Shown here piece after piece: positions 8,104-48,087 of a DNA stretch of 64,000 bases. Below the pieces are notes generated by a model that saw only the letters and a program-made list of their open reading frames with translations, was not told the origin of the DNA and did not search any database. Where the stretch lies: the NCBI GenBank assembly GCA_965644315.1, contig CBFFRQ010000081.1, forward strand, positions 62,001 to 126,000. Reading direction: 5' to 3'. Made by a program: the position numbers and the translations under genes. Source of the stretch: Caecitellus pseudoparvulus (taxonomy: Eukaryota > Protista > Bigyra: Bicosoecida). The first letter of the stretch is position 1, and each line of letters starts with the position of its first letter.

Positions 8104-8631
8104 CCCCACTGAGGGGGGTGGCGTCGTTGCCCTTGGGGTGGATGAAGCACACGTCGTGCCCTGCAGCGCCCTTGCGGATGCCACCAGGCGTGAAGCGCAT
8201 GCCTTGCTGCCCCAGCCATGCCACAGCTGCAGGCAGGTCGTCCACCCACAGCCCGACGTGGTTCAGCGCAGGCACGTGCACCTTGGGGGACTTGCCTGCG
8301 TCCAGGGGCTGCATGATGTCCACCTCCACAGCGTGGGGGCCGTGGCCCAGGGTCAGGATGTCCTCATCCACGTTCTCCTTCTCGCTGCTGAAGGTGCCAG
8401 TCTTGGTCAGCCCGAGACTGTCCACCCACAGCGCCGACAGCGCGCTCTTGGACAGGCCCCCCACAGCAATCTGCTGCAGGCCAAGCACACGGAAAGGGCG
8501 TGTCTGTGAAGATTGCAAGGGAAGGAGTGGGCGTGTCTGTTCTAGGTCCAGGAGGGGCTTGGCGCCAGGGCACGCACGGCGCTGGCAGTGGACAGCGCTC
8601 GTGCGCCTCGTGCCACGGCGGAGGACAGCAT
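8039..8631 (-). CDS. VOC/glyoxalase-family protein (methylmalonyl-CoA epimerase-like) with a probable mitochondrial transit peptide; 2 exons (8631-8578, 8503-8039)
   Basis: [59 protein letters not shown]. Exon 1 ([18 protein letters not shown]) is spliced in frame through a GTGCGT...CACAG intron at 8504-8577. Confidence 0.85.
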
Positions 8632-8773
8632 GGCGTCCGAGCAGAGACCGCGCAGGTGCAATACAATGAAAACTCGCAGAGTTTGAATGCCAGTCGCATG
8701 TAGAAGAGCGCTGCGTTGTCGTGTGTGTGGGTAGTGCCGCGGCGGCGCTCTTGCTGCGCGAGCTGGAGAAGCG

Positions 8774-8782
8774 TGCGGAAAT
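8774..8782 (-). promoter_or_regulatory. ATTTCCGCA motif in the divergent promoter between the VOC gene and the ANK-kinase-KEN gene
   Basis: One of ten exact copies, all near gene 5' ends or in first introns. Confidence 0.55.
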
Positions 8783-8866
8783 TGGCCCAGCCGAAACGCC
8801 GAAGCACTCCGCTGCCTCGCCGAGAGGGAGCTGGGCTGGGCATCAGCAGCATGGCTGGAGAGCAAG

Positions 8867-11800
8867 ATGAGCGGCGTGGCGGCATCAACATCTGCGCCAG
8901 CGTCATTGAGGACTATGAAGGCCACCAAGCCTCACAGTGAGTGCGCAGACCAGGCAATCAGTGCCTGCTCTGCTTCACACACGTGGCCGCCCGCCCCCAC
9001 GCCCAGAGCGCAGCACAGCCCCTCCCAACTGGTCAGCATTTCACCCAACGTCTCTGTGTCCAGTAACCTGGCGCAGTTGTCTCTGCCCCCTGGTACAGCG
9101 CCTGACGCAGGGTCAGAAGGGCCACCTGGCAGCAGCACTGGCTCGCCAGCCTCTGCTCCACGCGCTGGCACCAGCGCCCCGAAGCCACGCGTGGTGCAGG
9201 GCAGCCGGCGCATGACCCGCACCAGCAGCCTCGTGTCGTCCACCTCCGCAGGGCGCTCCCGCGCTGGCGCCTTCTCTGAGGCTGGCAGCGAGGCAGAGGG
9301 GGGGTCGGACGGCGCCGGAGGGGACCTCATGATCGCCCTGCGCAGCGGCAAGGTGCACGCCGCCCTGGAGTTGCTGGAGAGCGACCCGTCCTGCCTGAAT
9401 GCCCGTGGCGCCAGCCCTCTGAACGATGTGCTGCCCCTGCTGCTGCACAGCTTGGCGGAGCAGTACGACACCTTCGGCATCACCGGCAGCGAGGCGGTGT
9501 TCTTCACCTTCTTCCGGCGCCTGTGGCAGTTCATGACGCCGCACGAGCAGACCAACAACCGCACGCTGGCGACGTTCTTCTACGCCGCCTGCAAGTTCAA
9601 CCAGCTGGACTTCGTGGCGTGGGTGCTGCCCATCATCGCCGCCCGTACCACCCTCTCCATCGAGCGCCTCATCGTGGACCGCCTGTACAGCTACAACCGC
9701 CTGCGGCACTGTGCGCTGCACTACGTCGCACGCAACGGCAACGTGCGCCTGCTGCAGTGCCTGTCCTCCTTCGTGGCGCACCCGCTGCTGCAGGAGGCCA
9801 GCCTGCTCATGCAGTTCCCGCCGGGGCAGGAGGGTATGGAGTTGTCGTCGCTGTACATCGCAGCCCAGCAGCGCCATGCCGGCTTCGTGCGCCACGCGCT
9901 GGCGCCACACCTGGAGGCCCAGGGGGGTGGCGGGGAGGGCGGCGCGTCACCCTTCACGCCCGCCCTGCGCCAGCTGGTGCTGTGCCTCATGGTGCACGGG
10001 CTCATCGCGCTGGACGACACAGCCACTGCCGCGTGGATGGTGGGGGAGGCGCTGCCGGGCCTGGACCCCCTCATCTTCGCCCTGCCCATGGCCTTCTCGG
10101 GCCCCATGTCCCTGCCAGTGTCCCTGGAAGCCAAGGCGCAGGCCAAGCTCAGCGCCGCGTCGGCAGGTCGCACCAGCCGACCGCCCAATGCCCCAAACTG
10201 CCTCGGCTTGCACTTGTGTGTGTACCGCATGCCGCCGTCCACTCACCAGGCGGCGTCGGTGCCCTCCGCTGCCGCTGCAGTGGGCATTCAGGGCGTGGGC
10301 GGGCCCAAGGAGACGGCGGTGGAGCGCGTGAAGGCGTTTGCAGCAGCCATGTCCGCCAACCCTGCCTCGTCCAGCGACGAGGAGGGCAGGGGGCGCGCGC
10401 TCACATCGCACCTGGTCAACGCAGCGGCAGCCACCACCCCCTCCGCGCCCCAGCCAGCACTGCGCCTGTTCACGTGGCTGCTGGAGCGCTTCCCCTGGTT
10501 GGCGTCGGTGCCCTTCGCCATCGCCGTGGGGGAGGGTGGCGCACAGCACATCGAGTGGCGCAATGCGTTTCACTCGGCCTGCTCGGTGGGGCACCGTGGC
10601 GCCGCCCAGGCGCTGCTGGCTGCAGACCGCACGCTGCTGCACACGTACACGACTTCGGGCGGCAGTGACAGCGCCGACGGCAGCTCGGCAAGTCACCGTG
10701 GCAGCGTGGTGGAGAACCACCCCCTGTGGCTGGCGCTGGGCCAAGCGCGCATGACGGGGCAGTATGACTTCCTGCGCTGGCTGCTGCAGCACTACCCGCC
10801 GCTGGTCATCGAGCGGGAGATTTACTCCCAGTGCGAAGGGCTGTACGCCGTCGTGCCTGACTTCGTGAAGGCGCTGTGCAAGGCGACTGGCCTTCGCCTG
10901 CGCAAGTTCATGCCGCCTGGCGCCGCCCGCCCGTCCGACAGCAGCAGCATCCCCCTGGACCGCAGCGTGTCCAGCGCAGGCTCCACAGACGGCGGCAGTG
11001 GCCTGACCGCGGAGCAGGCGGAGACACTGCGCGCGGCAGCAGAGGCGTCCCTGCTGGCAGACTTGGCGGCAGAGGAGGCGGCCAGCGTCGCGTCAGGCGC
11101 GTCGGCCAGCACCGGCAAGAGCAAGGGGTCGCGCCGGCGCCGTAGACGCGCCCGCAAGGGCAGCCACAGCACGCCAGGGGGCGCACCCCGCAGCCGGGCA
11201 GGCAGCGCACCTGACACGCTGCAGCCGCCCACGCCTGCAGGCAGTGATGGCGAGGCTGAGGCGCCGTCCTTCTGGAGGGGGGCGGGGGAGCACGCGGGCA
11301 CGCTGTACGTCGTGGGGCGTGCCACGGGGGTGGTGCCTGCCGAGGCCACACAGGATGACTGGCTGGACTTCACGCCTGTCACATCGGCCGCACGCCGCTC
11401 CGCCCGAAGCCACGCTGCCGCCGCGGCAGGTCAGGTGCGCAGGCGACGGGGCTCTGGCTCCGCCCCCCGCAACCCTGTCCCGGTGCGCCCACCCCACCGG
11501 GCGGGGGCGGGGGTGACTGAGGTCCCACCTGCGGCACAGCGGCCACCTCACTCCAGCCTTGAACCCACCGCCCAAGCAGTGCACAAGCCACCGCCTCAGC
11601 GAGAAGGGGTGAAACAGGCACCACCACCTTCGCCACAGCCAGCCCCGGCACCGGTTGTGGCAGAAGTGCCGCCGCCCCCCGCCCCAGCAGCTGCAGTGGG
11701 CGCTGGGTCCACCCCGCCGGCGCCGCTCCCACAGCCGCGCGAAGAGCACAGCGCAGGAGGGGGCAGCGGCCTGTCAGTGTCGGAAATGGCAGAGGAGCAC

Positions 11801-13288
11801 TTCTTCAGTGACGACGACGAGGGGGAGGAGGTCGTCATTGGCAGCATGCGCTTCCATGAGCGGGACGTCATCGCCGTGGGCAGCGGCGGCACGGAGGTGT
11901 TCCGGGGCCGCTGCGGGCGCCGCCCCGCCGCCATCAAGCGCATGCCCCGGCGCCAACACAAGCTGCGCGAGGGGGAAATCGCCACCATGCTGGACCTGGA
12001 CGACACCGATGCCCATGCTGCCTACGCTCGGCATGTTGTCCGGTACTACGACGACGCGCGGGACCGGCATTTCCTGTACTTGGCCATGGAGCTGTGCGAC
12101 TGCACTCTGGAAACAGCCGTGTGCACTGCCCGGTCGCCCCCTGCACACAGTCCAGCCACAGCCACTGCAAGCGACGGCGCAGCATCCCCCGATGACGACA
12201 TTGCCTCCAGCCAAGGCCCCAGCCAGGCGCCGGGGGGGGCAGGCGCTTGGCAGTCCGTGCAGGCTGTGAAGGCACACCCCATCGAGGTGTGTCGGCAGGT
12301 CGTGGCTGGCGTCGCGCACTTGCACACCCACGGCGTGGCGCACCGGGACATCAAGCCCAACAACATCCTCCTGAAGCGCGGTGTCGCCAAGCTCTGCGAC
12401 TTTGGCCTCGCCCGCAGCGCTGCCGCGGAACGGTCCCGACACACTGCCACCACCGCCGGCGGCACGCCTGGCTGGCAGCCCCGGGAAGTGGTGGCCGCTC
12501 GCATGAAGGGGAGAGCTGTCACGGGGGGCGTGCGCGCTGATTTGTTCGGCGTGGGGTGCGTGCTGTTCTTCATTCTGAGCGGCGGCGCACACCCGTTCGG
12601 CGAGGCGGTGCTGCGGGAAGGGCACATTCTCAAGGACCACTTCTCACCCTTCCGCGCTCTGAATGCCTCCTCCGGCACACAGGACATTCGCCTCGTCTCC
12701 CATGACGCCGCCTGCCACCTCATCCGGCAGCTGCTGCACCCGCAACCTGACAGGCGCATGCCCATGGTGCAGGCACTGGCACACCCTCTGTTCTGGGACG
12801 CAGCCTCCTCCATCGCCTTCACCGCGCACTTCTCTGACATTGCCAAGCGCCTGTACGGCGTCCTGCCTGACCCCGCTGTCAGTCCCGCCCTGCAGGCCCT
12901 GGAAGCCACCTACACTCGCATGGAAGGGGCTGAGGCTGACTGGGCTGCCAAGCTGGCGGCAGTGGATGCGGCAGCGGGCCGGACATGGCCTGCCGCGGGC
13001 GGAGGCAGTGGAGGGGGGGAGGAGGAGTGGAAGTCCCCCCTGGGATACCTGCGCATGTTCAAGCGGCGCAAGGCGCACTGCCTGGGGCTTGTGCGTGCTG
13101 TGCGGAACATTGCATTCAGCCACGCCGTTGCGTACGTGCACGCAGGCACCTTCAGCAGCGTCAAGGACGCGCACGAGTACTGGCTGGCGGCCTTTCCTTG
13201 GTTGCCTGTCACTCTGTACGAAATCGTGGTCAGCGGCGTGGACCACCGCCTCTCCGAAGAGCTGCGAGCGCTGCTTCCCACTGCCTAG
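8867..13288 (+). CDS. Ankyrin-repeat + IRE1-type Ser/Thr kinase + KEN (RNase) domain protein, RNase L/IRE1-like; start uncertain (8867 or 9212)
   Basis: Ankyrin-like units: ALHYVARNGNVRLLQCL, SLYIAAQQRHAGFVRHAL, NAFHSACSVGHRGAAQALL, HPLWLALG..FLRWLL. Kinase: IAVGSGGTEVFRG, AAIKR, FLYLAMELC, HRDIKPNNILL, DFG, GTPGW, DLFGVGCVLFFILSGGAHPFG. KEN: HPLFWD..DWAAKL..GLVRAVRNIAFSH..YWLAAFPWLPVTLY. Confidence 0.85.
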   Translation: MSGVAASTSAPASLRTMKATKPHSECADQAISACSASHTWPPAPTPRAQHSPSQLVSISPNVSVSSNLAQLSLPPGTAPDAGSEGPPGSSTGSPASAPRAGTSAPKPRVVQGSRRMTRTSSLVSSTSAGRSRAGAFSEAGSEAEGGSDGAGGDLMIALRSGKVHAALELLESDPSCLNARGASPLNDVLPLLLHSLAEQYDTFGITGSEAVFFTFFRRLWQFMTPHEQTNNRTLATFFYAACKFNQLDFVAWVLPIIAARTTLSIERLIVDRLYSYNRLRHCALHYVARNGNVRLLQCLSSFVAHPLLQEASLLMQFPPGQEGMELSSLYIAAQQRHAGFVRHALAPHLEAQGGGGEGGASPFTPALRQLVLCLMVHGLIALDDTATAAWMVGEALPGLDPLIFALPMAFSGPMSLPVSLEAKAQAKLSAASAGRTSRPPNAPNCLGLHLCVYRMPPSTHQAASVPSAAAAVGIQGVGGPKETAVERVKAFAAAMSANPASSSDEEGRGRALTSHLVNAAAATTPSAPQPALRLFTWLLERFPWLASVPFAIAVGEGGAQHIEWRNAFHSACSVGHRGAAQALLAADRTLLHTYTTSGGSDSADGSSASHRGSVVENHPLWLALGQARMTGQYDFLRWLLQHYPPLVIEREIYSQCEGLYAVVPDFVKALCKATGLRLRKFMPPGAARPSDSSSIPLDRSVSSAGSTDGGSGLTAEQAETLRAAAEASLLADLAAEEAASVASGASASTGKSKGSRRRRRRARKGSHSTPGGAPRSRAGSAPDTLQPPTPAGSDGEAEAPSFWRGAGEHAGTLYVVGRATGVVPAEATQDDWLDFTPVTSAARRSARSHAAAAAGQVRRRRGSGSAPRNPVPVRPPHRAGAGVTEVPPAAQRPPHSSLEPTAQAVHKPPPQREGVKQAPPPSPQPAPAPVVAEVPPPPAPAAAVGAGSTPPAPLPQPREEHSAGGGSGLSVSEMAEEHFFSDDDEGEEVVIGSMRFHERDVIAVGSGGTEVFRGRCGRRPAAIKRMPRRQHKLREGEIATMLDLDDTDAHAAYARHVVRYYDDARDRHFLYLAMELCDCTLETAVCTARSPPAHSPATATASDGAASPDDDIASSQGPSQAPGGAGAWQSVQAVKAHPIEVCRQVVAGVAHLHTHGVAHRDIKPNNILLKRGVAKLCDFGLARSAAAERSRHTATTAGGTPGWQPREVVAARMKGRAVTGGVRADLFGVGCVLFFILSGGAHPFGEAVLREGHILKDHFSPFRALNASSGTQDIRLVSHDAACHLIRQLLHPQPDRRMPMVQALAHPLFWDAASSIAFTAHFSDIAKRLYGVLPDPAVSPALQALEATYTRMEGAEADWAAKLAAVDAAAGRTWPAAGGGSGGGEEEWKSPLGYLRMFKRRKAHCLGLVRAVRNIAFSHAVAYVHAGTFSSVKDAHEYWLAAFPWLPVTLYEIVVSGVDHRLSEELRALLPTA

Positions 13289-13316
13289 ACGCCGCCAGCC
13301 CGGCACTGGCAGCCAC

Positions 13317-14501
13317 CTACTCCGACGGCGGCGTGTCGCCTGAGGGTGGAGCGCCACCCCCACCGCCCATCATGCTGGCCATTTGTGCCAGGGCAGCGGG
13401 GTCCATCCCGCCCCCGTTCCCGCCGCCGCCGCCCATCATGCCGCCCATCATGCTGGCCATCTGCTGCATGGCGGCAGGGTTGCTCATCAAGTTCTGCGCC
13501 ATCTGCTGGAACTGCGGGCTCTGCATCATCTGGCCCACAGCAGGGTTGCTCAGCAATGCACCCAAGTCAGGCATGCCGCCCGCCCCCATACCAGGGAAGC
13601 CTGCCGGCATGCCGCCGCCCATGCCGCCGGGAGCTACCGGTGGCGGCGTCGGTGGCGCGACCTGCTGCAGCTTGGAGGCGGCAGACTCCTTGCCCTGCAG
13701 CGCCGCAGCGTTGGAAGGCTCCAGCTCCAGCGCCGCCTCAAACGCCTGCACTGCACCCTCGTACTGGCCCAGGTGGAAGCGTGCCGTGCCCAGACGGTTG
13801 TGAGCCTTCACGTACTGCGGGCTCAGCGCAATGGCAGCGTCGGCGTCAGCGGCAGCCTTGGAGTACTCGTGCAGCGTCAAGTGGGCAGCAGCGCGGTTGC
13901 ACAGGTACGTGTGGGCGCTGGCCCCCTGGGGTGCCAGCTCCAGCGCCTTGGTGTAGCAGGCGATAGCGTCCTGTGTGCGGCCTTCTTGCAGGGCGGCGTT
14001 GCCCTCAGCTTTGGCTTTCTCAGCTGCCTCCTCGTCTTGCACCGTGGGCTGGGGCGCCTTGCCGGTCTCGCCACTTGCCATGCGCTGGCGAAATCGGTCC
14101 AGAGCTGCCTTGAACTTCCCGACGTACTCTGCGAGCAAGCAAGTGAGGCAAGTGAGGGCATGACATGCGCAGAAAGCCACCACGAGTCGAACGTGCGCAC
14201 CTGGCGATGCAGCAGCAGCCTCCCCGAAGTAGCCACGGCCCCGAAGGCTGGTAATGTACTTCTCGAATAGCTCCGGCTTTGCCACTCCGTCTCCACGGCC
14301 CGCTTCGAAAGCCTCGTTCAGAGGAGCATGGGTGGCAGCAGTGTCAAAATCCGCATCCGTCAAGGACACAGCTCCAGCCAGCGCATCAGCCAGCGCCACT
14401 GCCTCCGTCCCTGCGTCAGGCCCCACCGCATGCAGATACTGCACAATGGATGCAATCAGAGTCTTGTCCACCGCAGGTCCAGTGGAGCCTGCAGAAGCCA
14501 T
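13317..14501 (-). CDS. SGTA: SGTA/Sgt2-like TPR co-chaperone; intron at 14129-14200
   Basis: N-terminal dimerisation motif (DKTLIASIVQYL), three TPRs (AEKAKAEGNAALQEG..YLCNRAAAHL..YVKAHNRLGTA), Met/Gly-rich STI1-like tail (LLSNPAVGQMMQSPQFQQMAQNLMSNP). Confidence 0.85.
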   Translation of the reverse strand: MASAGSTGPAVDKTLIASIVQYLHAVGPDAGTEAVALADALAGAVSLTDADFDTAATHAPLNEAFEAGRGDGVAKPELFEKYITSLRGRGYFGEAAAASPGAHVRLVVAFCACHALTCLTCLLAEYVGKFKAALDRFRQRMASGETGKAPQPTVQDEEAAEKAKAEGNAALQEGRTQDAIACYTKALELAPQGASAHTYLCNRAAAHLTLHEYSKAAADADAAIALSPQYVKAHNRLGTARFHLGQYEGAVQAFEAALELEPSNAAALQGKESAASKLQQVAPPTPPPVAPGGMGGGMPAGFPGMGAGGMPDLGALLSNPAVGQMMQSPQFQQMAQNLMSNPAAMQQMASMMGGMMGGGGGNGGGMDPAALAQMASMMGGGGGAPPSGDTPPSE

Positions 14502-23570: not shown

Positions 23571-23652
23571 GCGCAGATGCCCGAGCGGTCTAAGGGGTTG
23601 TGTTCAGGTCGCAATGTATTCGTACTCGTGGGTTCAAATCCCACTCTGCGCA
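23571..23652 (+). tRNA. tRNA-Leu(CAG), copy 1
   Basis: Acceptor GCGCAGA/TCTGCGC with A73; anticodon arm TTGTG-TTCAGGT-CGCAA; long variable arm GTA-TTCG-TAC; T arm GTGGG-TTCAAAT-CCCAC; followed by a T6 Pol III terminator. Confidence 0.95.
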
Positions 23653-23658
23653 AGCTTC

Positions 23659-23673
23659 TTTTTTCTTCTTTTT
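23659..23673 (+). terminator. RNA polymerase III oligo-T terminator of tRNA-Leu copy 1
   Basis: TTTTTTCTTCTTTTT starts 6 nt after the tRNA 3' end. Confidence 0.75.
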
Positions 23674-26600
23674 CCATGGACAAAGTGGTCGACTGGATCT
23701 GACACCACAAACCGATACCCATTTCCTGAACTACGCAGCCACAGCCACACCAAATCTCAGCCGACGACAAAACCGAAAAGCAACGCAATGACCGAGAAAG
23801 ACACTGCAAGCTCAGAAGGGTGACCTGTCATTCTGCATCGAAACTCAGCCATGACTTCCACTGCCCTCTCAACACCCTCAGCCAAGCACTGCCATGCGCA
23901 TCACTCGTTCAACAACACAAACTGCCAATAAAACCTGCACCCCACAAGCCGCATCGATGTGCAGTGGTGCAGAAAAGCTATCCGACAACAAAACAACACC
24001 AAATGTCGCGCTTGAAGCACACAACAAAGGGCACATTCGATGCGCTCAGCGAGTGGTAATTGCGAACCAAGCGGGCTACAAACCAGTCAATTAATACCTC
24101 TGGCTGATAACGTGATGTGAAAACACGGCCCCGATCACACAGTGCAAGCTCTGCAATTAGCTGTCTACGCCTGAACAGCATCTGACAGAAAGCAAAGATG
24201 TACTGAAGAGAGCTGAGCGCCAAAGGTAGTTCCTTTGACGCTTCCAGGTTGATAGATACACATGTAATCGTGTAACAGCCAAATGAATGATGTTCTGCAA
24301 TGACATCCCGACGGAATTTTTTGTCACAGAAATAGGTAGCGGAATCGCAGGGTAAATATTCCCCGAATCGATACAAATATGGCACAACAAGTCATGATTT
24401 GCCAGCTGAACGCTCCAGAGAGTGACCCTTTGCACACAAAAGAACAATCCTTGCGCAAATAATTTCTCACGGTTCTCGAACAAACATCACTGCTACTCTG
24501 CTCAACGTGCTTCCGATGGCAATGGCATTGTTGAAATCAGTAGACTACCTTGAGGATGTAGGAACAAGCTATTGGTCGCAAGCAACATTTACTCCTTGGG
24601 TTGGATACTAGTCCGGTGCATCTTATCTGTGATGATCTTTTGAAGAGTGTGAAATCATCAATTCTTCCTCAATAAAGTTTCATCAGAAAGCCAGTTAAGA
24701 CTACTTCTTGAAGAATTGGTGAACAACAATCTCAAAAGCGCTGCAACGAACGTTGGAGAATCACACCAGATATAGGGAAAAAGCAATTTGTACGATACAG
24801 AGTTTGGTCAAGAACATGATTTGCTTTTCAACATCACACACAAGGCATTTGGTTGCAAGGAAGAGATTCATCCCTCTACAGTTAGGGAATCACGGCTCAA
24901 GCTGTCTGCGCAGACAGAATTACTCCTTGTTTGACACCACCCGTAGAACTTACATCGTACACAGTACGAATTCTTGTATCAGTGCGCTTGAGAAAGTGAG
25001 AAAATCAGGCAATTCAGAATGAAAGCACTCGATACTTTTCACCAGCAGCGTTATTTTCTTGGCTTTAATCTCCCTGCAAGTTTGTTCATGAAAGCCATGG
25101 ATTCGCAGCATTTTGGAAGCAATCTTGGCTTCTTCTTTCACTGGAACCCGACATTAACTCTATATCAACCCGCCATGCATTCATTGAAGAGGAAGTGGTT
25201 CTCCAAGTTCGGACGATATTCTCGGTTGATTTCTTTAAGAATTATTTGGCTACAGAGTTTGAATCGGGTCAAGTCTAAACCTCAAGCAAGGCATGCAGTG
25301 ATTTTGCTTAACATGGCTCAAGTGGGCCATAACTTCGTGAAGTGGGGTTTGGTTCTTGCCTCTCTGGAAATGCAACAAAGTATTTGAATGAAGAATGCTT
25401 TAGCATGGCATGCATTTAATAACCTGAAGTATTGTTCAAAGTGTAGAGCTTGTCTTGTTGACTTGAAGGAACTGTTCTTTTTGGCATCGTGAGGCGCTTT
25501 CTTTTGCTTGGTCCTTGTTTTAAAAGCTGCACAGGTTGAGGTAGTGAAATGATTTCATTCGACAAGAACCGATCTCGATCTAGGACTGATTCATGCGCAC
25601 TAAGATAGATATCTTTTGATGCACGTTGACCTCTTTAAATCTCTACTTGGTCTTGTTCAACATCAAGATTCCAGTGCAATGTGGAGCAAGGAACAATGCT
25701 TTGGAGTGGATACGATGTGAGATGCATCCACTTGCTTAAATCAAGGATCGCAAGTCTATTCAATGTCGCCTTTACTTGCTGAAAGGTATATTCCCAAGGA
25801 AGTTGAAGGACTGCGAAGGGTTCTCAAGCAAGATCCCGCATACATTCTTAAAGTATGTTTTGGTACAGAGGACATCGAAGGAGTGATTTGCGTCTTACAT
25901 TAGACTTGGTCCGGTTGCGCTTGAACGATTTCTTGGTTTTTCTGTCCTATACCATTCTTTTCTGACTTGTCACATTTAGCAAAGAGTGTAAGGATGTGTA
26001 CGCATGAATCGTCCAAGTTTCACGCATTGTTGGGAGTAGTTGGATGTTTTAGACTTTTTCCGGCTCACTACTTGTCCTTCCCAAGTTTGCAAGAGCATTC
26101 ATGCTTCTGGTTAAGTCGCGTGTTTCGTTTGTTCTCCTTGAGAAAGGAAGAGCATCATACAATACTCCATGTCTTTTCTTCTCGTAAATGCAGAGGGAAG
26201 GGATATCGTCCTCTTTGGGAAATTGTCCAAATGCCGAATCCTTTCAGCCGTTTTGACTCGAAAGATCTCGCTAAATGGATTCATGCTGTGCATTGTTTGC
26301 ATTCAGCGCAACATCAAGTTTCAGGAACGGTTCCTGCACGATGGACTGTCCATGGTCAGTCTGTATCCGCTGTACAGTTTAAACCATTATGTGCAAGTTA
26401 TCATGAAAATGTTTTGCTGGACGTTCCTGCCTTTCTTGGCAGACTGATTGTGTTTGGCTTTTGGCCGCGCATTTGATGACATCAGTGTTGAATTGTTCGT
26501 TTGGGAGTTGCTGCTTTTGGGTGGTATTCTTATGCTGTGTTTTGTTGCCTGCATGCTTTCAGTGTGGTAGAGTGCTAAATGTTGGTGGGAACTGAGATTG

Positions 26601-27414
26601 AGGTGTGTGTCATGGTGATCCCAATAAGTTCAGGATCAACAGATGTCTGTTCTTCCCCGCTTGGTTTCCTAAAGCTTCTTCAATGGACACATTGTTGTGT
26701 TAGAGGTCTTTTGTGGTGTTTGGCTGCAGGCTTTGGGCGTTGTGAAGTTGACATGCGAGGAATTTCTAGGGTTGAACGCATTGGTTTCTGGCATAGCGAA
26801 CGTTCCCATTAGCATGTGCGCTGTTTGACGTTTCAGGTGTTCATCTCTCTGCGCTCTGTCCGAATGGGGGCATTCTTGCATGTGCTTTCGGCGATCAGGC
26901 AGGCACCCTTCGCTGGGGTTTTCACGTTAACGGATGGGTCGACTCACTCAATGTTTCTTGTCGTGAAGACTTGTTCGCACACAAATGATGTAAAAAAAGG
27001 TTGTGGTCTACGTGAAGCAAAATCTTGGGCACTTCTGAAGTATTTCCTTGGGCTGTAACGCAGTGCTAGGTTGCCTTTGGCTGTAGAGGAAGCGAGTCAT
27101 CCAAAATGACGCTGCGTACTTCTGAAAGCCATGTGCGTGTAATATATATGCTGCTTGAGCTTTCGCTTCTGTCTTGCTTCTGTAGCTCAGGGGTAGAGCG
27201 TCGCTTTCATAAGGCGCAGGTCAAGGGTTCGATCCCCTTCAGGAGCACCTTTTTTCACTCACGACATCCGATTTTTGTCCGTTCTTTTGGATGGGAAGCA
27301 AGAATTGACGTTCGCATCCTTTTTTCAGAACTTGTCCGTTCGATGGGGCTTTCTTTTGTGATTCGTGATACTAATTCGCCGTGTGGTTCCTGTTCCAATG
27401 CCAGGCACGGCCAT
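23666..27414. other. Low-GC, apparently non-protein-coding island; candidate centromere/replication origin
   Basis: Sampled core lines are 30-42% GC (25381-25440: 18/60; 24661-24720: 20/60; 25801-25860: 25/60), against roughly 60-70% elsewhere. Only short ORFs with no recognisable motifs. The left arm is C/A-rich and the right arm G/T-rich. Confidence 0.55.
27176..27247 (+). tRNA. Elongator tRNA-Met(CAT)
   Basis: Acceptor GCTTCTG/CAGGAGC with A73; D arm GCTC/GAGC; anticodon loop TTCATAA; T arm AAGGG-TTCGATC-CCCTT. G1:C72 and a TTC T-loop argue against initiator. A T6 terminator follows, and a TATA-like AATATATA lies about 30 nt upstream. Confidence 0.9.
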
Positions 27415-27427
27415 GAAAAAAGAAGCT

Positions 27428-27509
27428 TGCGCAGAGTGGGATTTGAACCCACGAGTACGAATACATTGCGACCTGAACACAACCCCTTAGACCGCTCGGG
27501 CATCTGCGC
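27428..27509 (-). tRNA. tRNA-Leu(CAG), copy 2 (identical to copy 1, inverted)
   Basis: Exact reverse complement of 23571-23652, with an oligo-T terminator on the minus strand (A6 at 27416-27421). Confidence 0.95.
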
Positions 27510-45196: not shown

Positions 45197-48087
45197 TCAC
45201 TGGCCCTGCTTGCGCAGGCGTGCGTTCTCGGCCTTGAGAGCCTCCAGCTCACGGCGGATGCGGGCCAACTCCGGCTCCGCCTGGGACTCTGCAGAGGCTG
45301 ACGGCTCGCTCTCCCCCGGCCCCATCACCGCAGACGGCTCAGGCTCAGGCTCGTCCTCGCCCAGCGCCCCACTCGCCTTGCCGTGAGCGTTGTCCGTCGC
45401 TGCAGCCGCCACCGGCCCCTCCTCTTCAGCGGGCGGTCCCGACCCGCCACCACCCGCTGCAGCTGCCGCGACACTGGTGCTAGTGGGCGCTGTGCCTGCC
45501 GGTGCGGCACTGGTGGCGCCCGATATCGCTGGGCGAGGCGTGCCCAGAGCCCTGCCTCCGCGACGAGCTGTCGCTGCGCCATGGGCGTCGGAGGACAGGT
45601 GAGCCGAAGCTGCACGTGCAACCGACTCGTGGCCTGTGGGCGCCACCTTGCCGGGTCCAGAGGAGGAGGAGGGCGCGCTGGGCGGCGCCTTGGCAGAGGG
45701 CACCGCCTCGAACTCCTCGCTCAGAGTGTACAGCTGCCCCAGCATGGAGGACATCTTGGTCAGGTCTGGGCGGTTGCCGTCCAGGCGGAAGCAGGAGGAG
45801 GGAATGCCCAGCTGGGCCAGGCTGACCTGCATGGGCCCAGTGGTCACGCTGGTGGGCAGGAAGGACACGAAGAACACACGGGCACCAGCGTGCACGTCCT
45901 TGCGGTACTGCCGGAACAGCTGGGCGAAGCTGGAGCCCTGGCTGGTGCCATTCTCCTCCTCGTCGGTCACCATGACGAACAAGTCGATGGGGGTGCCCTC
46001 ATCGTAGTACTTGCGCAGGCCCGCGGCAGGGGCGGTGGTGCCAGTTGCAGGCGTGCCCGTGGACACCTTGAGCACGTCGGCAGCAGAGCGAGGCTGCAGG
46101 GGGGACGGCCGCACCGCCTCGTCGAAGAAGTCCAGTCGGGCGTCCAGCACCACCGACAGCAGCGAGCCCAGGATGCTGGCTGTCCGAATAGCCACCTCCA
46201 TGCTGCCAGAGGCGTCGCCCAGCACTGCCACGCGCAAGCCCCGCTTGGGGGATGCCGCCGCCAGCGCGGTCAGCTGCTGCTCCGCGAAGGGTGCCAGCAA
46301 GGAAGCAAAGGCGTACCCCCTGGAGGTGAACTCCAGGTACCGCTCCATGAGCTTGCCGAAGTTGATGTCGTACTGGCCTTGAGACAGGTCCACATCCCCC
46401 TGCCCCAGGCGGGCCATGACCGCCGCCTCGGCGCCGGGGCAGTGCAGCTCCTCGTACCACCACAGCACCTCTCCCAGGGGAGCGTGGGCTGCAAACCATG
46501 CCTTGGTGGCGGGGTGCATGGCTGCGGGGTCCACCTTGCGGTGCACGAAGGAGTACATGTTGGCGATCTCGGGCCAGGATGTGGTCATGGCCGTTAGCGT
46601 CTGAGGGCTCAGCGTCTCCAGCTGGCGCACGACGCTGTCCTGGGGCACGGCGTCCATGCCTGTGAAGACCACCGCCGCAAAGTAGGGCAGGGCCAGGTTG
46701 GCGGGCTTCACGTGGGCGATCTTGAAGATGTCCCGCCACACAGACAGGGCAGCAGTCACATCCGCCCCTGCCGCCGACAGCTGCAGCAGCAAGTACTCCA
46801 GGCGCTCACGGGGCACCGCGGCGGCCCACCGGCACACCCGCTTGCACAGGGAGGAAGTGACAGTGCGGGAGTTCTCAGACGCCTCCAGCAGGATGTGGTG
46901 GCGGGACCGGGCGGCGGCGGAGTACGCGGCACTGGCAGGGCGCATGGACACCAGCCCCGCCTCCTCTGGTGCCAGCGTGGTCAGCACGTCCGACAGCGCC
47001 CCAGGCCGGCGCTCCACTGCCGCCTGCACCACAGCCCGTGCCGAGGCAGGCACGAAAGCGGAGCCATCTGCCGTCACGTGTACCTCGTCGTCATCGTCCC
47101 CTGGGAGGGGGGCCTCGCCCCGCTCCGCACGCCAAGCTGCGCGCCCAGTCTTCAGCATGGCGCGGGCTGACGTCACCGCTGCCCTGCGTGCAGCTGGCGT
47201 GGTGTAGGCACTGGGACCCCACGTGGCAGTGGCCTCCGCCTCGCCGCTGGAGGGCATGTCGTAGGCGTTGATCGGCGCGGCGTCGGAAGACGCAGCTGCC
47301 GGGGCGGCTGCTCCCTGCTGCCCCGGCTTCTCCACGCGGCGAAGAGCATCCAGGGGGAAGTGCCCCTTGGCAGCCCGGCGCTGCAGGGCGGAGCGGTTCA
47401 TGCGCCGCAGCAGGGCGCGGGCGGCCCGCACGCCGTCCAGGAGGGACAGCGCCTTGGCCAGCACTGGGGCATCCATGAACGTGGCGTCCTCCATCAAGTC
47501 ATCAAAAGCGTCTGCCTCGCCTGCTCCCCAGCATGCAGCGAGAATGCGCCCGCGAATGGGCACGGCGATGGCGATGTTGTTGTCCAGGCGCGAGTTCACC
47601 TCCTTGAAGTATGCCTGCGGATGAAGGAGGGGCGGCAATGCATGCAAAGCGTATGGAAGGCGGGCAGAGTGCAGCACGCACTGCGCGGTCTTGGCGGATG
47701 TGCTGCAAGTGGTCCACGAAGGACGCGTTGGCGTCATACAGCAGTTGCCGGATGGCGTGAGCCTTCGCGGCCTCGGAGCTAACCTCCTTGCCAGCCAGAC
47801 CAGGCCCTGAAGGCAGCTTCGGGAGGTCCTTGCCCTTCTCTACACTGCAGTACTCGCAGTCTGAGGAACCAGGGAGCGCGAGCAATGATGTGGTGCGGTG
47901 TACGGCGCAGGCATGGTTGGCGTGGTGGGTTGGCGTGGTGGCACGTGATGTCGGCACGTGTTCCTCGGTCGCCGACCCGCACCACCTTCACACAGTACTC
48001 ACACGGCATGAATTCGCTGTTTCGAAATGCGCACACCCTGCACTTCCAGCCGCCCACTGCTCCTCCGTGCTCCCAAGCAGCAGCCAT
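45197..48087 (-). CDS. RanBP2-type zinc finger + TROVE-like helical region + vWA domain protein; 3 exons
   Basis: Spliced N-terminus WKCRVCAFRNSEFMPYCEYC (W-x-C-x2-C-x3-N-x6-C-x2-C). WRDIFKIAHVKP helical region. vWA MIDAS-type motifs VAVLGDASGSM, GTTAPAA, DLFVMVTDEEEN. Short C-terminal coiled coil. Introns at 47861-48002 and about 47615-47680. Confidence 0.7.

What the first reader, a model, noticed from the sequence alone, without database searches (positions are those of the whole stretch)
8867..13288. RNase L-like architecture (ankyrin sensor + kinase + KEN ribonuclease) in a microbial eukaryote
Seen: ankyrin-like repeats (about 9330-10800), an acidic-helix/basic linker (AAEASLLADLAAEE..KSKGSRRRRRRARKG), an IRE1-type kinase with intact AAIK, HRDIKPNN and DFG motifs, and a KEN domain with R-N-I-A-F-S-H (13103-13123, an Rx5H HEPN-type motif). 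No signal peptide or IRE1 luminal domain is evident. Established: ANK-kinase-KEN is the layout of vertebrate RNase L (2-5A-activated, pseudokinase, RNLGEH), whereas IRE1 is an ER membrane protein. IRE-like kinases without the standard luminal layout also exist in Dictyostelium (irl family). Inference: a cytosolic, ligand-gated ribonuclease, possibly an independently assembled antiviral or stress effector that kept an active kinase. Its ligand is unknown, and no OAS/cGAS-like gene is visible in this window.
Basis: partly seen in the sequence, partly recalled or inferred. Interest (0 to 1): 0.8.

Follow-up and report, generated by a model that had tools for sequence, protein, structure and literature searches.

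The report
Soluble ankyrin-kinase-RNase in marine protist
A marine single-celled eukaryote has a membrane-free relative of the stress sensor IRE1 with ankyrin-like repeats at the front, the same layout as our antiviral enzyme RNase L but probably assembled separately; whether it cuts RNA and what switches it on are not shown.

Summary
A conserved gene encodes degenerate ankyrin repeats (Pfam Ank_2 E=2.5e-7, over cut-off), a 300-residue linker, an IRE1-type kinase with intact catalytic residues and a very divergent KEN domain (below the Pfam cut-off; the modelled kinase-KEN matches Ire1 at Z=26.9). It has no signal peptide or membrane helix, and the genome has a separate membrane IRE1. The true start is probably a short upstream exon (ATG 8851). 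Syntenic orthologs in two related marine species are under purifying selection. A second soluble paralog (pseudokinase-KEN) exists; this scan noted it, and a further one, before.

It is not RNase L: active kinase much closer to IRE1, long linker, interrupted repeats, no OAS/cGAS/CD-NTase found. The nuclease motif is Rx5H rather than Rx4H and the catalytic Tyr is displaced, so cutting is uncertain. Most likely it is a cytosolic, dimerisation-gated IRE-family kinase-RNase. Soluble IRE kinases (Dictyostelium) and independent ankyrin gains are already published. Nothing here supports an antiviral role specifically. New variant of a known kind; moderate interest.

The parts
8851..8936 (+). Probable true first exon (28 codons, acidic and hydrophilic, no signal peptide), out of frame with the long ORF until spliced
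   Evidence: Inferred: equivalent short first exons with a shared N..IE[DN]Y motif and a phase-2 donor in both other species; in one of them the long ORF has no usable in-frame ATG for about 290 codons. No RNA coverage here.
8937..9006 (+). Probable 70-nt intron (GTGAGT...CAG; alternative acceptors 9018, 9036)
   Evidence: Inferred; the length fits the 74-nt intron shown by RNA contigs in the neighbouring gene.
8867..13288 (+). Long open frame, 1473 codons; residue numbers in this report count from 8867
   Evidence: orthologs 53-54% identical over the full length.
9007..9316 (+). Low-complexity Ser/Ala/Pro N-terminal tail, poorly conserved except an Arg/Ser-rich patch at aa 111-141
9317..10921 (+). 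Helical domain with 5-6 recognisable, degenerate, interrupted ankyrin-like repeats (about aa 153-180, 232-262, 279-305, 324-350, 563-592, 616-645); most conserved part of the protein
   Evidence: Pfam Ank_2 E=2.5e-7 and Ank_4 over cut-off, 3 of 3 orthologs match; ESM Atlas feature hits 0.95-0.96 to ankyrin clusters, with low recognition score; 67-89% identity, dN/dS 0.10-0.36. Fold not confirmed: single-sequence model pLDDT 44.7.
11009..11161 (+). Acidic helix (AAEASLL) followed by a poly-Arg run
   Evidence: Conserved in all three orthologs; coordinates.
11162..11821 (+). Low-complexity Pro/Ala-rich linker with small conserved islands, ending in an acidic patch
   Evidence: 40-63% identity over aa 686-985.
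11822..12796 (+). IRE1-type Ser/Thr kinase: K1024, alphaC E1037, HRD 1159-61, K1163, N1166, DFG 1178-80 invariant in orthologs; APE altered to PxE; invariant Ser/Thr in the activation loop; disordered insert aa 1090-1125
   Evidence: Pkinase E=1.2e-30; best PDB match IRE1 E=2e-34, profile 2.5e-40; alignments.
12797..13285 (+). Divergent KEN (HEPN-type) domain
   Evidence: Pfam E=0.044, only hit; profile-profile to IRE1 KEN P=95%, E=3.4e-8; W1310, S1323, W1359, R1410, R1413, N1414, F1443, P1444, L1446 invariant with canonical IRE1s; model pLDDT about 78-94 apart from one loop, matching Ire1 to the C-terminus.
13094..13123 (+). Putative RNase motif R1410-x2-R1413-N1414-x4-H1419 (Rx5H; IRE1 has Rx4H)
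   Evidence: invariant in orthologs; the paralog on contig C53 has R-N-x3-H.
13046..13048 (+). Y1394: Tyr invariant in all four soluble proteins, candidate stand-in for the IRE1 catalytic Tyr
   Evidence: role is inference only.

Best explanation
A cytosolic member of the IRE kinase-KEN family that has a degenerate ankyrin-like interaction domain in place of the ER-luminal sensor. Likely mechanism, by analogy with IRE1: a protein partner or cellular state acting on the ankyrin domain brings copies together; the kinases phosphorylate each other and pair back to back; two KEN domains form one composite site in which R1413, N1414 and H1419 cut single-stranded RNA, leaving a 2',3'-cyclic phosphate; the poly-Arg linker may help recruit RNA. 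It would serve a standing stress or RNA-control function rather than a 2-5A pathway. Shown: the domain order, absence of membrane signals, intact kinase motifs, KEN fold, conservation, a separate canonical IRE1. Inferred: dimerisation, kinase and RNase activity, the trigger and the substrates.
For: Kinase best matches IRE1. The modelled kinase-KEN aligns to Ire1 over residues 4-485, Z=26.9, rmsd 3.3, 376 aligned, against about 250 for ordinary kinases. R, N, H invariant in three species, KEN dN/dS 0.14-0.53. No hydrophobic segment above 1.57 outside the kinase versus 2.35 for the real IRE1. Canonical IRE1 at G000:C31. Basic and acidic residues at the IRE1 dimer face are kept (R1019, Asp 1045-1048, R1059; their role in IRE1 is from my own knowledge). 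RNA-run contigs lie inside the ORF, in runs that also show the neighbour's spliced transcript. Precedent: soluble IRE kinases with RNase domains in Dictyostelium (PMC1420674).
Against: The His is one residue further from the Arg than in IRE1, and the general-base Tyr has no counterpart at its usual distance (11-13 extra residues precede the motif). The structure model was built with IRE1 rows in its alignment, so it leans to that fold, and active-site distances could not be measured. The ankyrin fold was not confirmed by structure. Only three species are known, so invariance is weak evidence.
Confidence: 0.5

Rival explanations
1. An active cytosolic kinase whose KEN domain is a catalytically dead or feeble structural appendage (dimer or RNA-binding surface); signalling is by phosphorylation.
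For: Rx5H spacing with Ser at the usual His position; the K-K-H-H-type polar stretch is replaced by I-A-F-S; displaced Tyr; Pfam score 14.3 vs cut-off 23.3. In Ire1 the His is worth more than 3e5-fold, so its geometry matters (PMC3149027).
Against: R, N and H are all kept, also in the 28-30% identical paralog with canonical Rx4H spacing. HEPN motifs span Rx4-6H (PMC3710099). The Tyr hydroxyl is worth only about tenfold in Ire1. The motif region is more conserved than the rest of the KEN.
Confidence: 0.3
2. A functional analogue of RNase L: the ankyrin domain binds a nucleotide second messenger or a viral product and unleashes broad RNA decay to stop giant-virus or virophage infection.
For: Same domain order as RNase L; KEN fold also matches RNase L (4o1o, Z=21.9); the ANK domain is the most constrained part, as for a binding site. 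Earlier scan notes report many virophage elements in this genome (unchecked).
Against: No OAS1_C, Mab-21 or SMODS match in the genome (the first two had no positive control). No similarity to the RNase L ankyrin domain. A 300-residue linker separates ANK and kinase, whereas they abut in RNase L (own knowledge). Single copy, syntenic among housekeeping genes, divergence similar to neighbours, no sign of positive selection. No viral homologue of the KEN found.
Confidence: 0.12
3. The ordinary ER-membrane IRE1, mis-read because exons with a signal peptide and membrane helix were missed.
For: An NCBI fragment of a near-identical protein is named IRE1A; a 5' exon was indeed missed.
Against: The missed exon is hydrophilic in all three species; there is no membrane helix; a complete IRE1 with luminal-type region, membrane helix, kinase, KEN (E=3e-16) and CCCH finger lies on another contig.
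Confidence: 0.02

Closest known systems
IRE1 (yeast Ire1, human IRE1-alpha; PDB 3fbv, 2rio, 6w3c)
   Same: Kinase family, kinase-KEN fold and order, R-N..H residues, long linker with a basic patch before the kinase.
   Different: No signal peptide, luminal domain or membrane helix; ankyrin-like domain instead; Rx5H; insertion before the motif; displaced Tyr; APE altered.
Vertebrate RNase L (PDB 4o1o, 4oau)
   Same: Order ANK - kinase fold - KEN; soluble.
   Different: Kinase motifs intact rather than pseudokinase; sequence far closer to IRE1; repeats degenerate, interrupted and not alignable to RNase L; 300-residue linker; twice the length; no OAS found.
Non-RNase L ANK-kinase-RNase proteins (Chu et al. 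2023, PMC10400998; chordate ANK-kinase clusters of 895-924 aa among the top shape matches in the ESM Atlas)
   Same: Ankyrin repeats gained independently on a kinase-RNase core.
   Different: The clusters seen are chordate; the paper's text does not name the other cases and its figures were not readable. This one is in a marine protist and too divergent for the Pfam RNase model at the 1e-5 cut-off that study used.
Dictyostelium soluble IRE-family kinases (PMC1420674)
   Same: Non-membrane IRE kinases with RNase(L) domains next to one canonical IreA; function unknown.
   Different: From memory they are of similar length and not known for ankyrin repeats.
Paralog in this genome, G000:C53 about 128010-130049
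   Same: Closest relative outside the orthologs (kinase-KEN E=1.4e-23 one way, 1.2e-21 the other); shares KEN features.
   Different: Pseudokinase (HGN, no DFG), canonical Rx4H, no ankyrin or other N-terminal domain evident.

Membership tests
IRE kinase-KEN family (broad) | Kinase whose best relatives are IRE1 | tested here: met
   Top 16 PDB sequences are IRE1, E about 1e-34 vs 1e-13 for the next kinase; tree support 100/99 against other kinases of this genome.
IRE kinase-KEN family (broad) | KEN domain directly after the kinase | tested here: met
   below the Pfam cut-off; model guided by IRE1 rows.
IRE kinase-KEN family (broad) | Catalytic set R, N, H (Rx4H) plus general-base Tyr | tested here: inconclusive
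   R1413, N1414, H1419 present but Rx5H; Tyr displaced.
IRE kinase-KEN family (broad) | Endoribonuclease activity | not testable with these tools
   Needs an assay.
Canonical IRE1 | Signal peptide, luminal sensor domain, one membrane helix | tested here: not met
   Hydropathy scan only, no SignalP; first exon hydrophilic; separate IRE1 present.
RNase L | N-terminal ankyrin repeats | tested here: met
   Pfam over cut-off on the isolated domain, ESM features; fold unconfirmed, internal-repeat test inconclusive.
RNase L | Ankyrin domain homologous to RNase L's, with 2-5A-binding residues | tested here: not met
   No match to any PDB ankyrin chain, RNase L included, at E up to 10; residues could not be mapped.
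RNase L | Pseudokinase | tested here: not met
   VAIK-Lys, alphaC-Glu, HRD, DFG all present and invariant.
RNase L | Belongs to the jawed-vertebrate RNase L clade | tested here: inconclusive
   No RNase L sequence was available for the tree. By score, RNase L is absent from hits at E below 1e-15 where IRE1 scores 1e-37 to 1e-40.
RNase L | OAS partner making 2-5A | tested here: not met
   No OAS1_C, Mab-21 or SMODS match; weak negatives, divergent or spliced genes can be missed.
RNase L | Activation by 2-5A | not testable with these tools
   Needs an assay.
Dictyostelium Irl-type soluble IRE kinases | Shared descent with the Irl proteins | not tested
   No Irl sequence was returned by any search.

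The most novel reading that the evidence does not exclude
A marine protist independently built a working RNase L equivalent: an ankyrin sensor for an unknown infection signal that switches on a KEN nuclease with a re-wired active site, possibly pairing with the sensor-less pseudokinase-KEN paralog, as an antiviral RNA-decay pathway that needs no OAS.
Probability: 0.12. Interest if true: 0.85.

Novelty: new variant of a known kind. Interest (0 to 1): 0.48.

Why it matters
If the KEN domain cuts RNA, this is a protist case of the same domain assembly that gave vertebrates RNase L, with the kinase still active. It would offer a natural comparison for how an ER stress sensor becomes a cytosolic RNA-decay switch. 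It also shows that Pfam-threshold surveys miss divergent kinase-KEN proteins: two of the three found in this genome fall below the cut-off. Heterotrophic marine protists are hosts of giant viruses and their defences are little known, so a small soluble kinase-KEN family is a concrete target to test. If the KEN is dead, it is an ordinary lineage-specific kinase with a relic domain.

Tried and rejected
Slip: the single large representatives search and one own-genome search were sent with a start one base out of frame. They say nothing about the KEN domain. Single-sequence AlphaFold of the N-terminal domain gave pLDDT 44.7 and only generic helical-repeat matches: uninformative either way. PDB, NCBIfam and PHROGs searches with that domain found nothing relevant. 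My internal-repeat test was not significant (best P=0.056, and repeats were picked by eye; first attempt timed out). ESM Atlas did not recognise the KEN (scores under 0.8). Word searches found only the three species plus one fragment; P0053/P0054 are unrelated double kinases. No KEN relatives in viral contigs. I looked for the further soluble kinase-KEN of note s1-661142 and did not find it: candidates were a MAP2K-like and a GCN2-like kinase. The organism could not be named by a tool. No search was run with the joined spliced model; the junction was only inspected in a script.
Full report
Observation. The + strand frame 8867-13288 is open for 1473 codons. It sits among housekeeping genes: CNOT1, a glyoxalase-fold (methylmalonyl-CoA epimerase-like) gene, an SGTA-like TPR gene, a DegT aminotransferase and an EDC4-like gene. 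Copies 99% identical exist in other assemblies, and an independent contig spans the stretch with no indel listed inside the ORF. Residue numbers below count from 8867.

Host. The genome is 30.6 Mb with eukaryotic rDNA arrays, and the stretch occurs in marine metagenomes. No tool named the organism. My reading of the short 18S gene, the gene style and the CCCH-tailed IRE1 is a heterotrophic stramenopile; this is inference. A fragment of nearly the same protein is filed under Symbiodinium sp. KB8 on a 1.8-kb contig, most likely as a co-cultured contaminant (inference).

Gene model. The start at 8867 is probably not the real one. In all three species a short hydrophilic exon with a shared N..IE[DN]Y motif ends at a phase-2 GT donor and splices in frame to the long exon. 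Here that is ATG 8851, exon 8851-8936 and a 70-nt intron 8937-9006. In one ortholog the long frame has no in-frame ATG for about 290 codons, so an upstream exon is needed. No RNA contig covers the junction. The exon is not a signal peptide, which strengthens the soluble reading. I did not search with the joined model.

Orthologs and selection. Two related marine species carry full-length orthologs, 53-54% identical to this protein and 75% to each other, in the same gene order. Pairwise dN/dS is below 1 in every domain: 0.10 for the N-terminal domain, 0.21 for the kinase, 0.24 for KEN and 0.14 for the KEN core in the closer pair; 0.22-0.53 in the distant pairs, where synonymous sites are partly saturated. 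Divergence is similar to the neighbours. Beyond these, word searches found no family member. That negative is weak, because my one exhaustive search was sent out of frame.

N-terminal domain. Residues 151-685 are helical and the most conserved part. Pfam Ank_2 scores 24.7 bits on the whole protein (cut-off 27.3) and 31.6 bits, E=2.5e-7, on the isolated domain; all three orthologs match five ankyrin models. ESM Atlas features give ankyrin clusters at 0.95-0.96, with a low recognition score. Five or six repeats can be read by eye, separated by long loops. They are not significantly alike in a shuffle test, nothing relevant in the PDB matches by sequence, and the single-sequence model was too poor to judge. 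Ankyrin-like is the best call, at moderate confidence, and it is not the RNase L array.

Kinase. The best matches are IRE1 by more than 20 orders of magnitude over other kinases. K1024, E1037, HRD, K1163, N1166 and DFG are invariant in the orthologs; APE is changed to PxE; activation-loop Ser/Thr are invariant. It reads as an active kinase, unlike RNase L.

KEN domain. Pfam gives only Ribonuc_2-5A, at E=0.044. Profile comparison with IRE1 KEN domains gives P=95%, E=3.4e-8, and nine hallmark positions are invariant with canonical IRE1s. The AlphaFold model (pLDDT 76.6, pTM 0.81) matches Ire1 over its whole length (Z=26.9, rmsd 3.3, 376 residues) and RNase L at Z=21.9. IRE1 rows were in the alignment, so the model leans that way. 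In Ire1 the catalytic set is R1056, N1057, H1061 (Rx4H) and Y1043; the His is worth over 3e5-fold and the Tyr hydroxyl about tenfold (PMC3149027). Here R1413 and N1414 are kept, the His is one place later (Rx5H, within the HEPN range Rx4-6H, PMC3710099), and 11-13 extra residues displace the Tyr; Y1394 is a candidate stand-in. Activity is plausible, not shown.

Family in this genome. A canonical IRE1 lies on contig C31, with a membrane helix (hydropathy 2.35 against at most 1.57 outside the kinase here), kinase, KEN at E=3e-16 and a CCCH finger. A third member on C53 is a pseudokinase-KEN with Rx4H and no evident sensor. In a small tree the four soluble proteins separate from three IRE1s at 94/93, just under the firm threshold, with the paralog on a long branch and no RNase L or Irl included. 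No OAS1_C, Mab-21 or SMODS domain was found; two of these searches had no positive control. Earlier scan notes describe the pseudokinase paralog and one more soluble kinase-KEN that I could not locate.

Expression. Contigs from RNA-type runs lie at 11536-11762, 12670-12915 and 13100-13348, in runs that also hold the neighbour's spliced transcript. This supports transcription; contigs give no strand or level, and the last piece could belong to the convergent gene.

Mechanism. Most likely (0.5) a cytosolic IRE-family switch: a partner or stress acting on the ankyrin domain clusters the protein, the kinases trans-phosphorylate and pair back to back, and the paired KEN domains cut RNA. The 300-residue linker with a basic run resembles IRE1 more than RNase L (own knowledge). 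Rivals: active kinase with a dead KEN (0.3); a true RNase L analogue gated by an infection signal (0.12); mis-read canonical IRE1 (0.02).

Comparison and verdict. It works like IRE1 in its catalytic half and looks like RNase L in domain order, but it is a member of neither. Soluble IRE kinases with RNase domains are published for Dictyostelium (PMC1420674). Independent ankyrin gains on kinase-RNase proteins outside RNase L are published too (PMC10400998), and chordate ANK-kinase clusters are among the top shape matches. I found no paper describing this protist protein. What is new is the lineage, the re-wired motif and the pairing with a pseudokinase paralog. New variant of a known kind; interest 0.48.

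Noticed in passing
L015:4011-6049 (G000:C53:128010-130049, +): Soluble pseudokinase-KEN paralog (HGN in place of HRD, no DFG, R-N-x3-H motif) with a probable short first exon and an acidic/basic C-terminal tail; below all Pfam RNase thresholds.
   Followed up: partly
L014:1633-6576 (G000:C31): Canonical membrane IRE1 with a C-terminal CCCH zinc finger; its 5' end with the signal peptide probably lies in an upstream exon.
   Followed up: partly
window 8504-8577: 74-nt intron (minus strand) in the glyoxalase-fold gene, shown by RNA contigs in two runs; the transcript reaches at least 8723, head to head with the kinase gene.
   Followed up: yes
window 8520-8850 versus L016:8425-9750 and L017:8111-9391: Both related species have a Bin3-type RNA methyltransferase gene between the glyoxalase-fold gene and the kinase gene; it is absent at this place in the window.
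   Followed up: no
window 23571-27509: Low-GC stretch (41-50%) bracketed by two inward-facing tRNA-Leu(CAG) genes with a tRNA-Met inside; already noted by the scan.
   Followed up: no
window 13288-13317: The kinase gene and the SGTA-like gene end about 30 bases apart, tail to tail, in all three species, so their 3' ends probably overlap.
   Followed up: no
window 45197-47737 (-): 846-aa ORF with weak DUF3291 (E=2e-4) and vWA_Ro60 (E=0.03) matches.
   Followed up: no
L005, L006, L007 (G000:C11, C54, C7): Near-identical ATG1/ULK-like kinase on three contigs, perhaps haplotypes or a duplication.
   Followed up: no
other contigs of G000 (notes returned): Earlier notes report virophage polyproteins with a Pol-beta-type nucleotidyltransferase; unchecked, and no link to this gene was found.
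   Followed up: no
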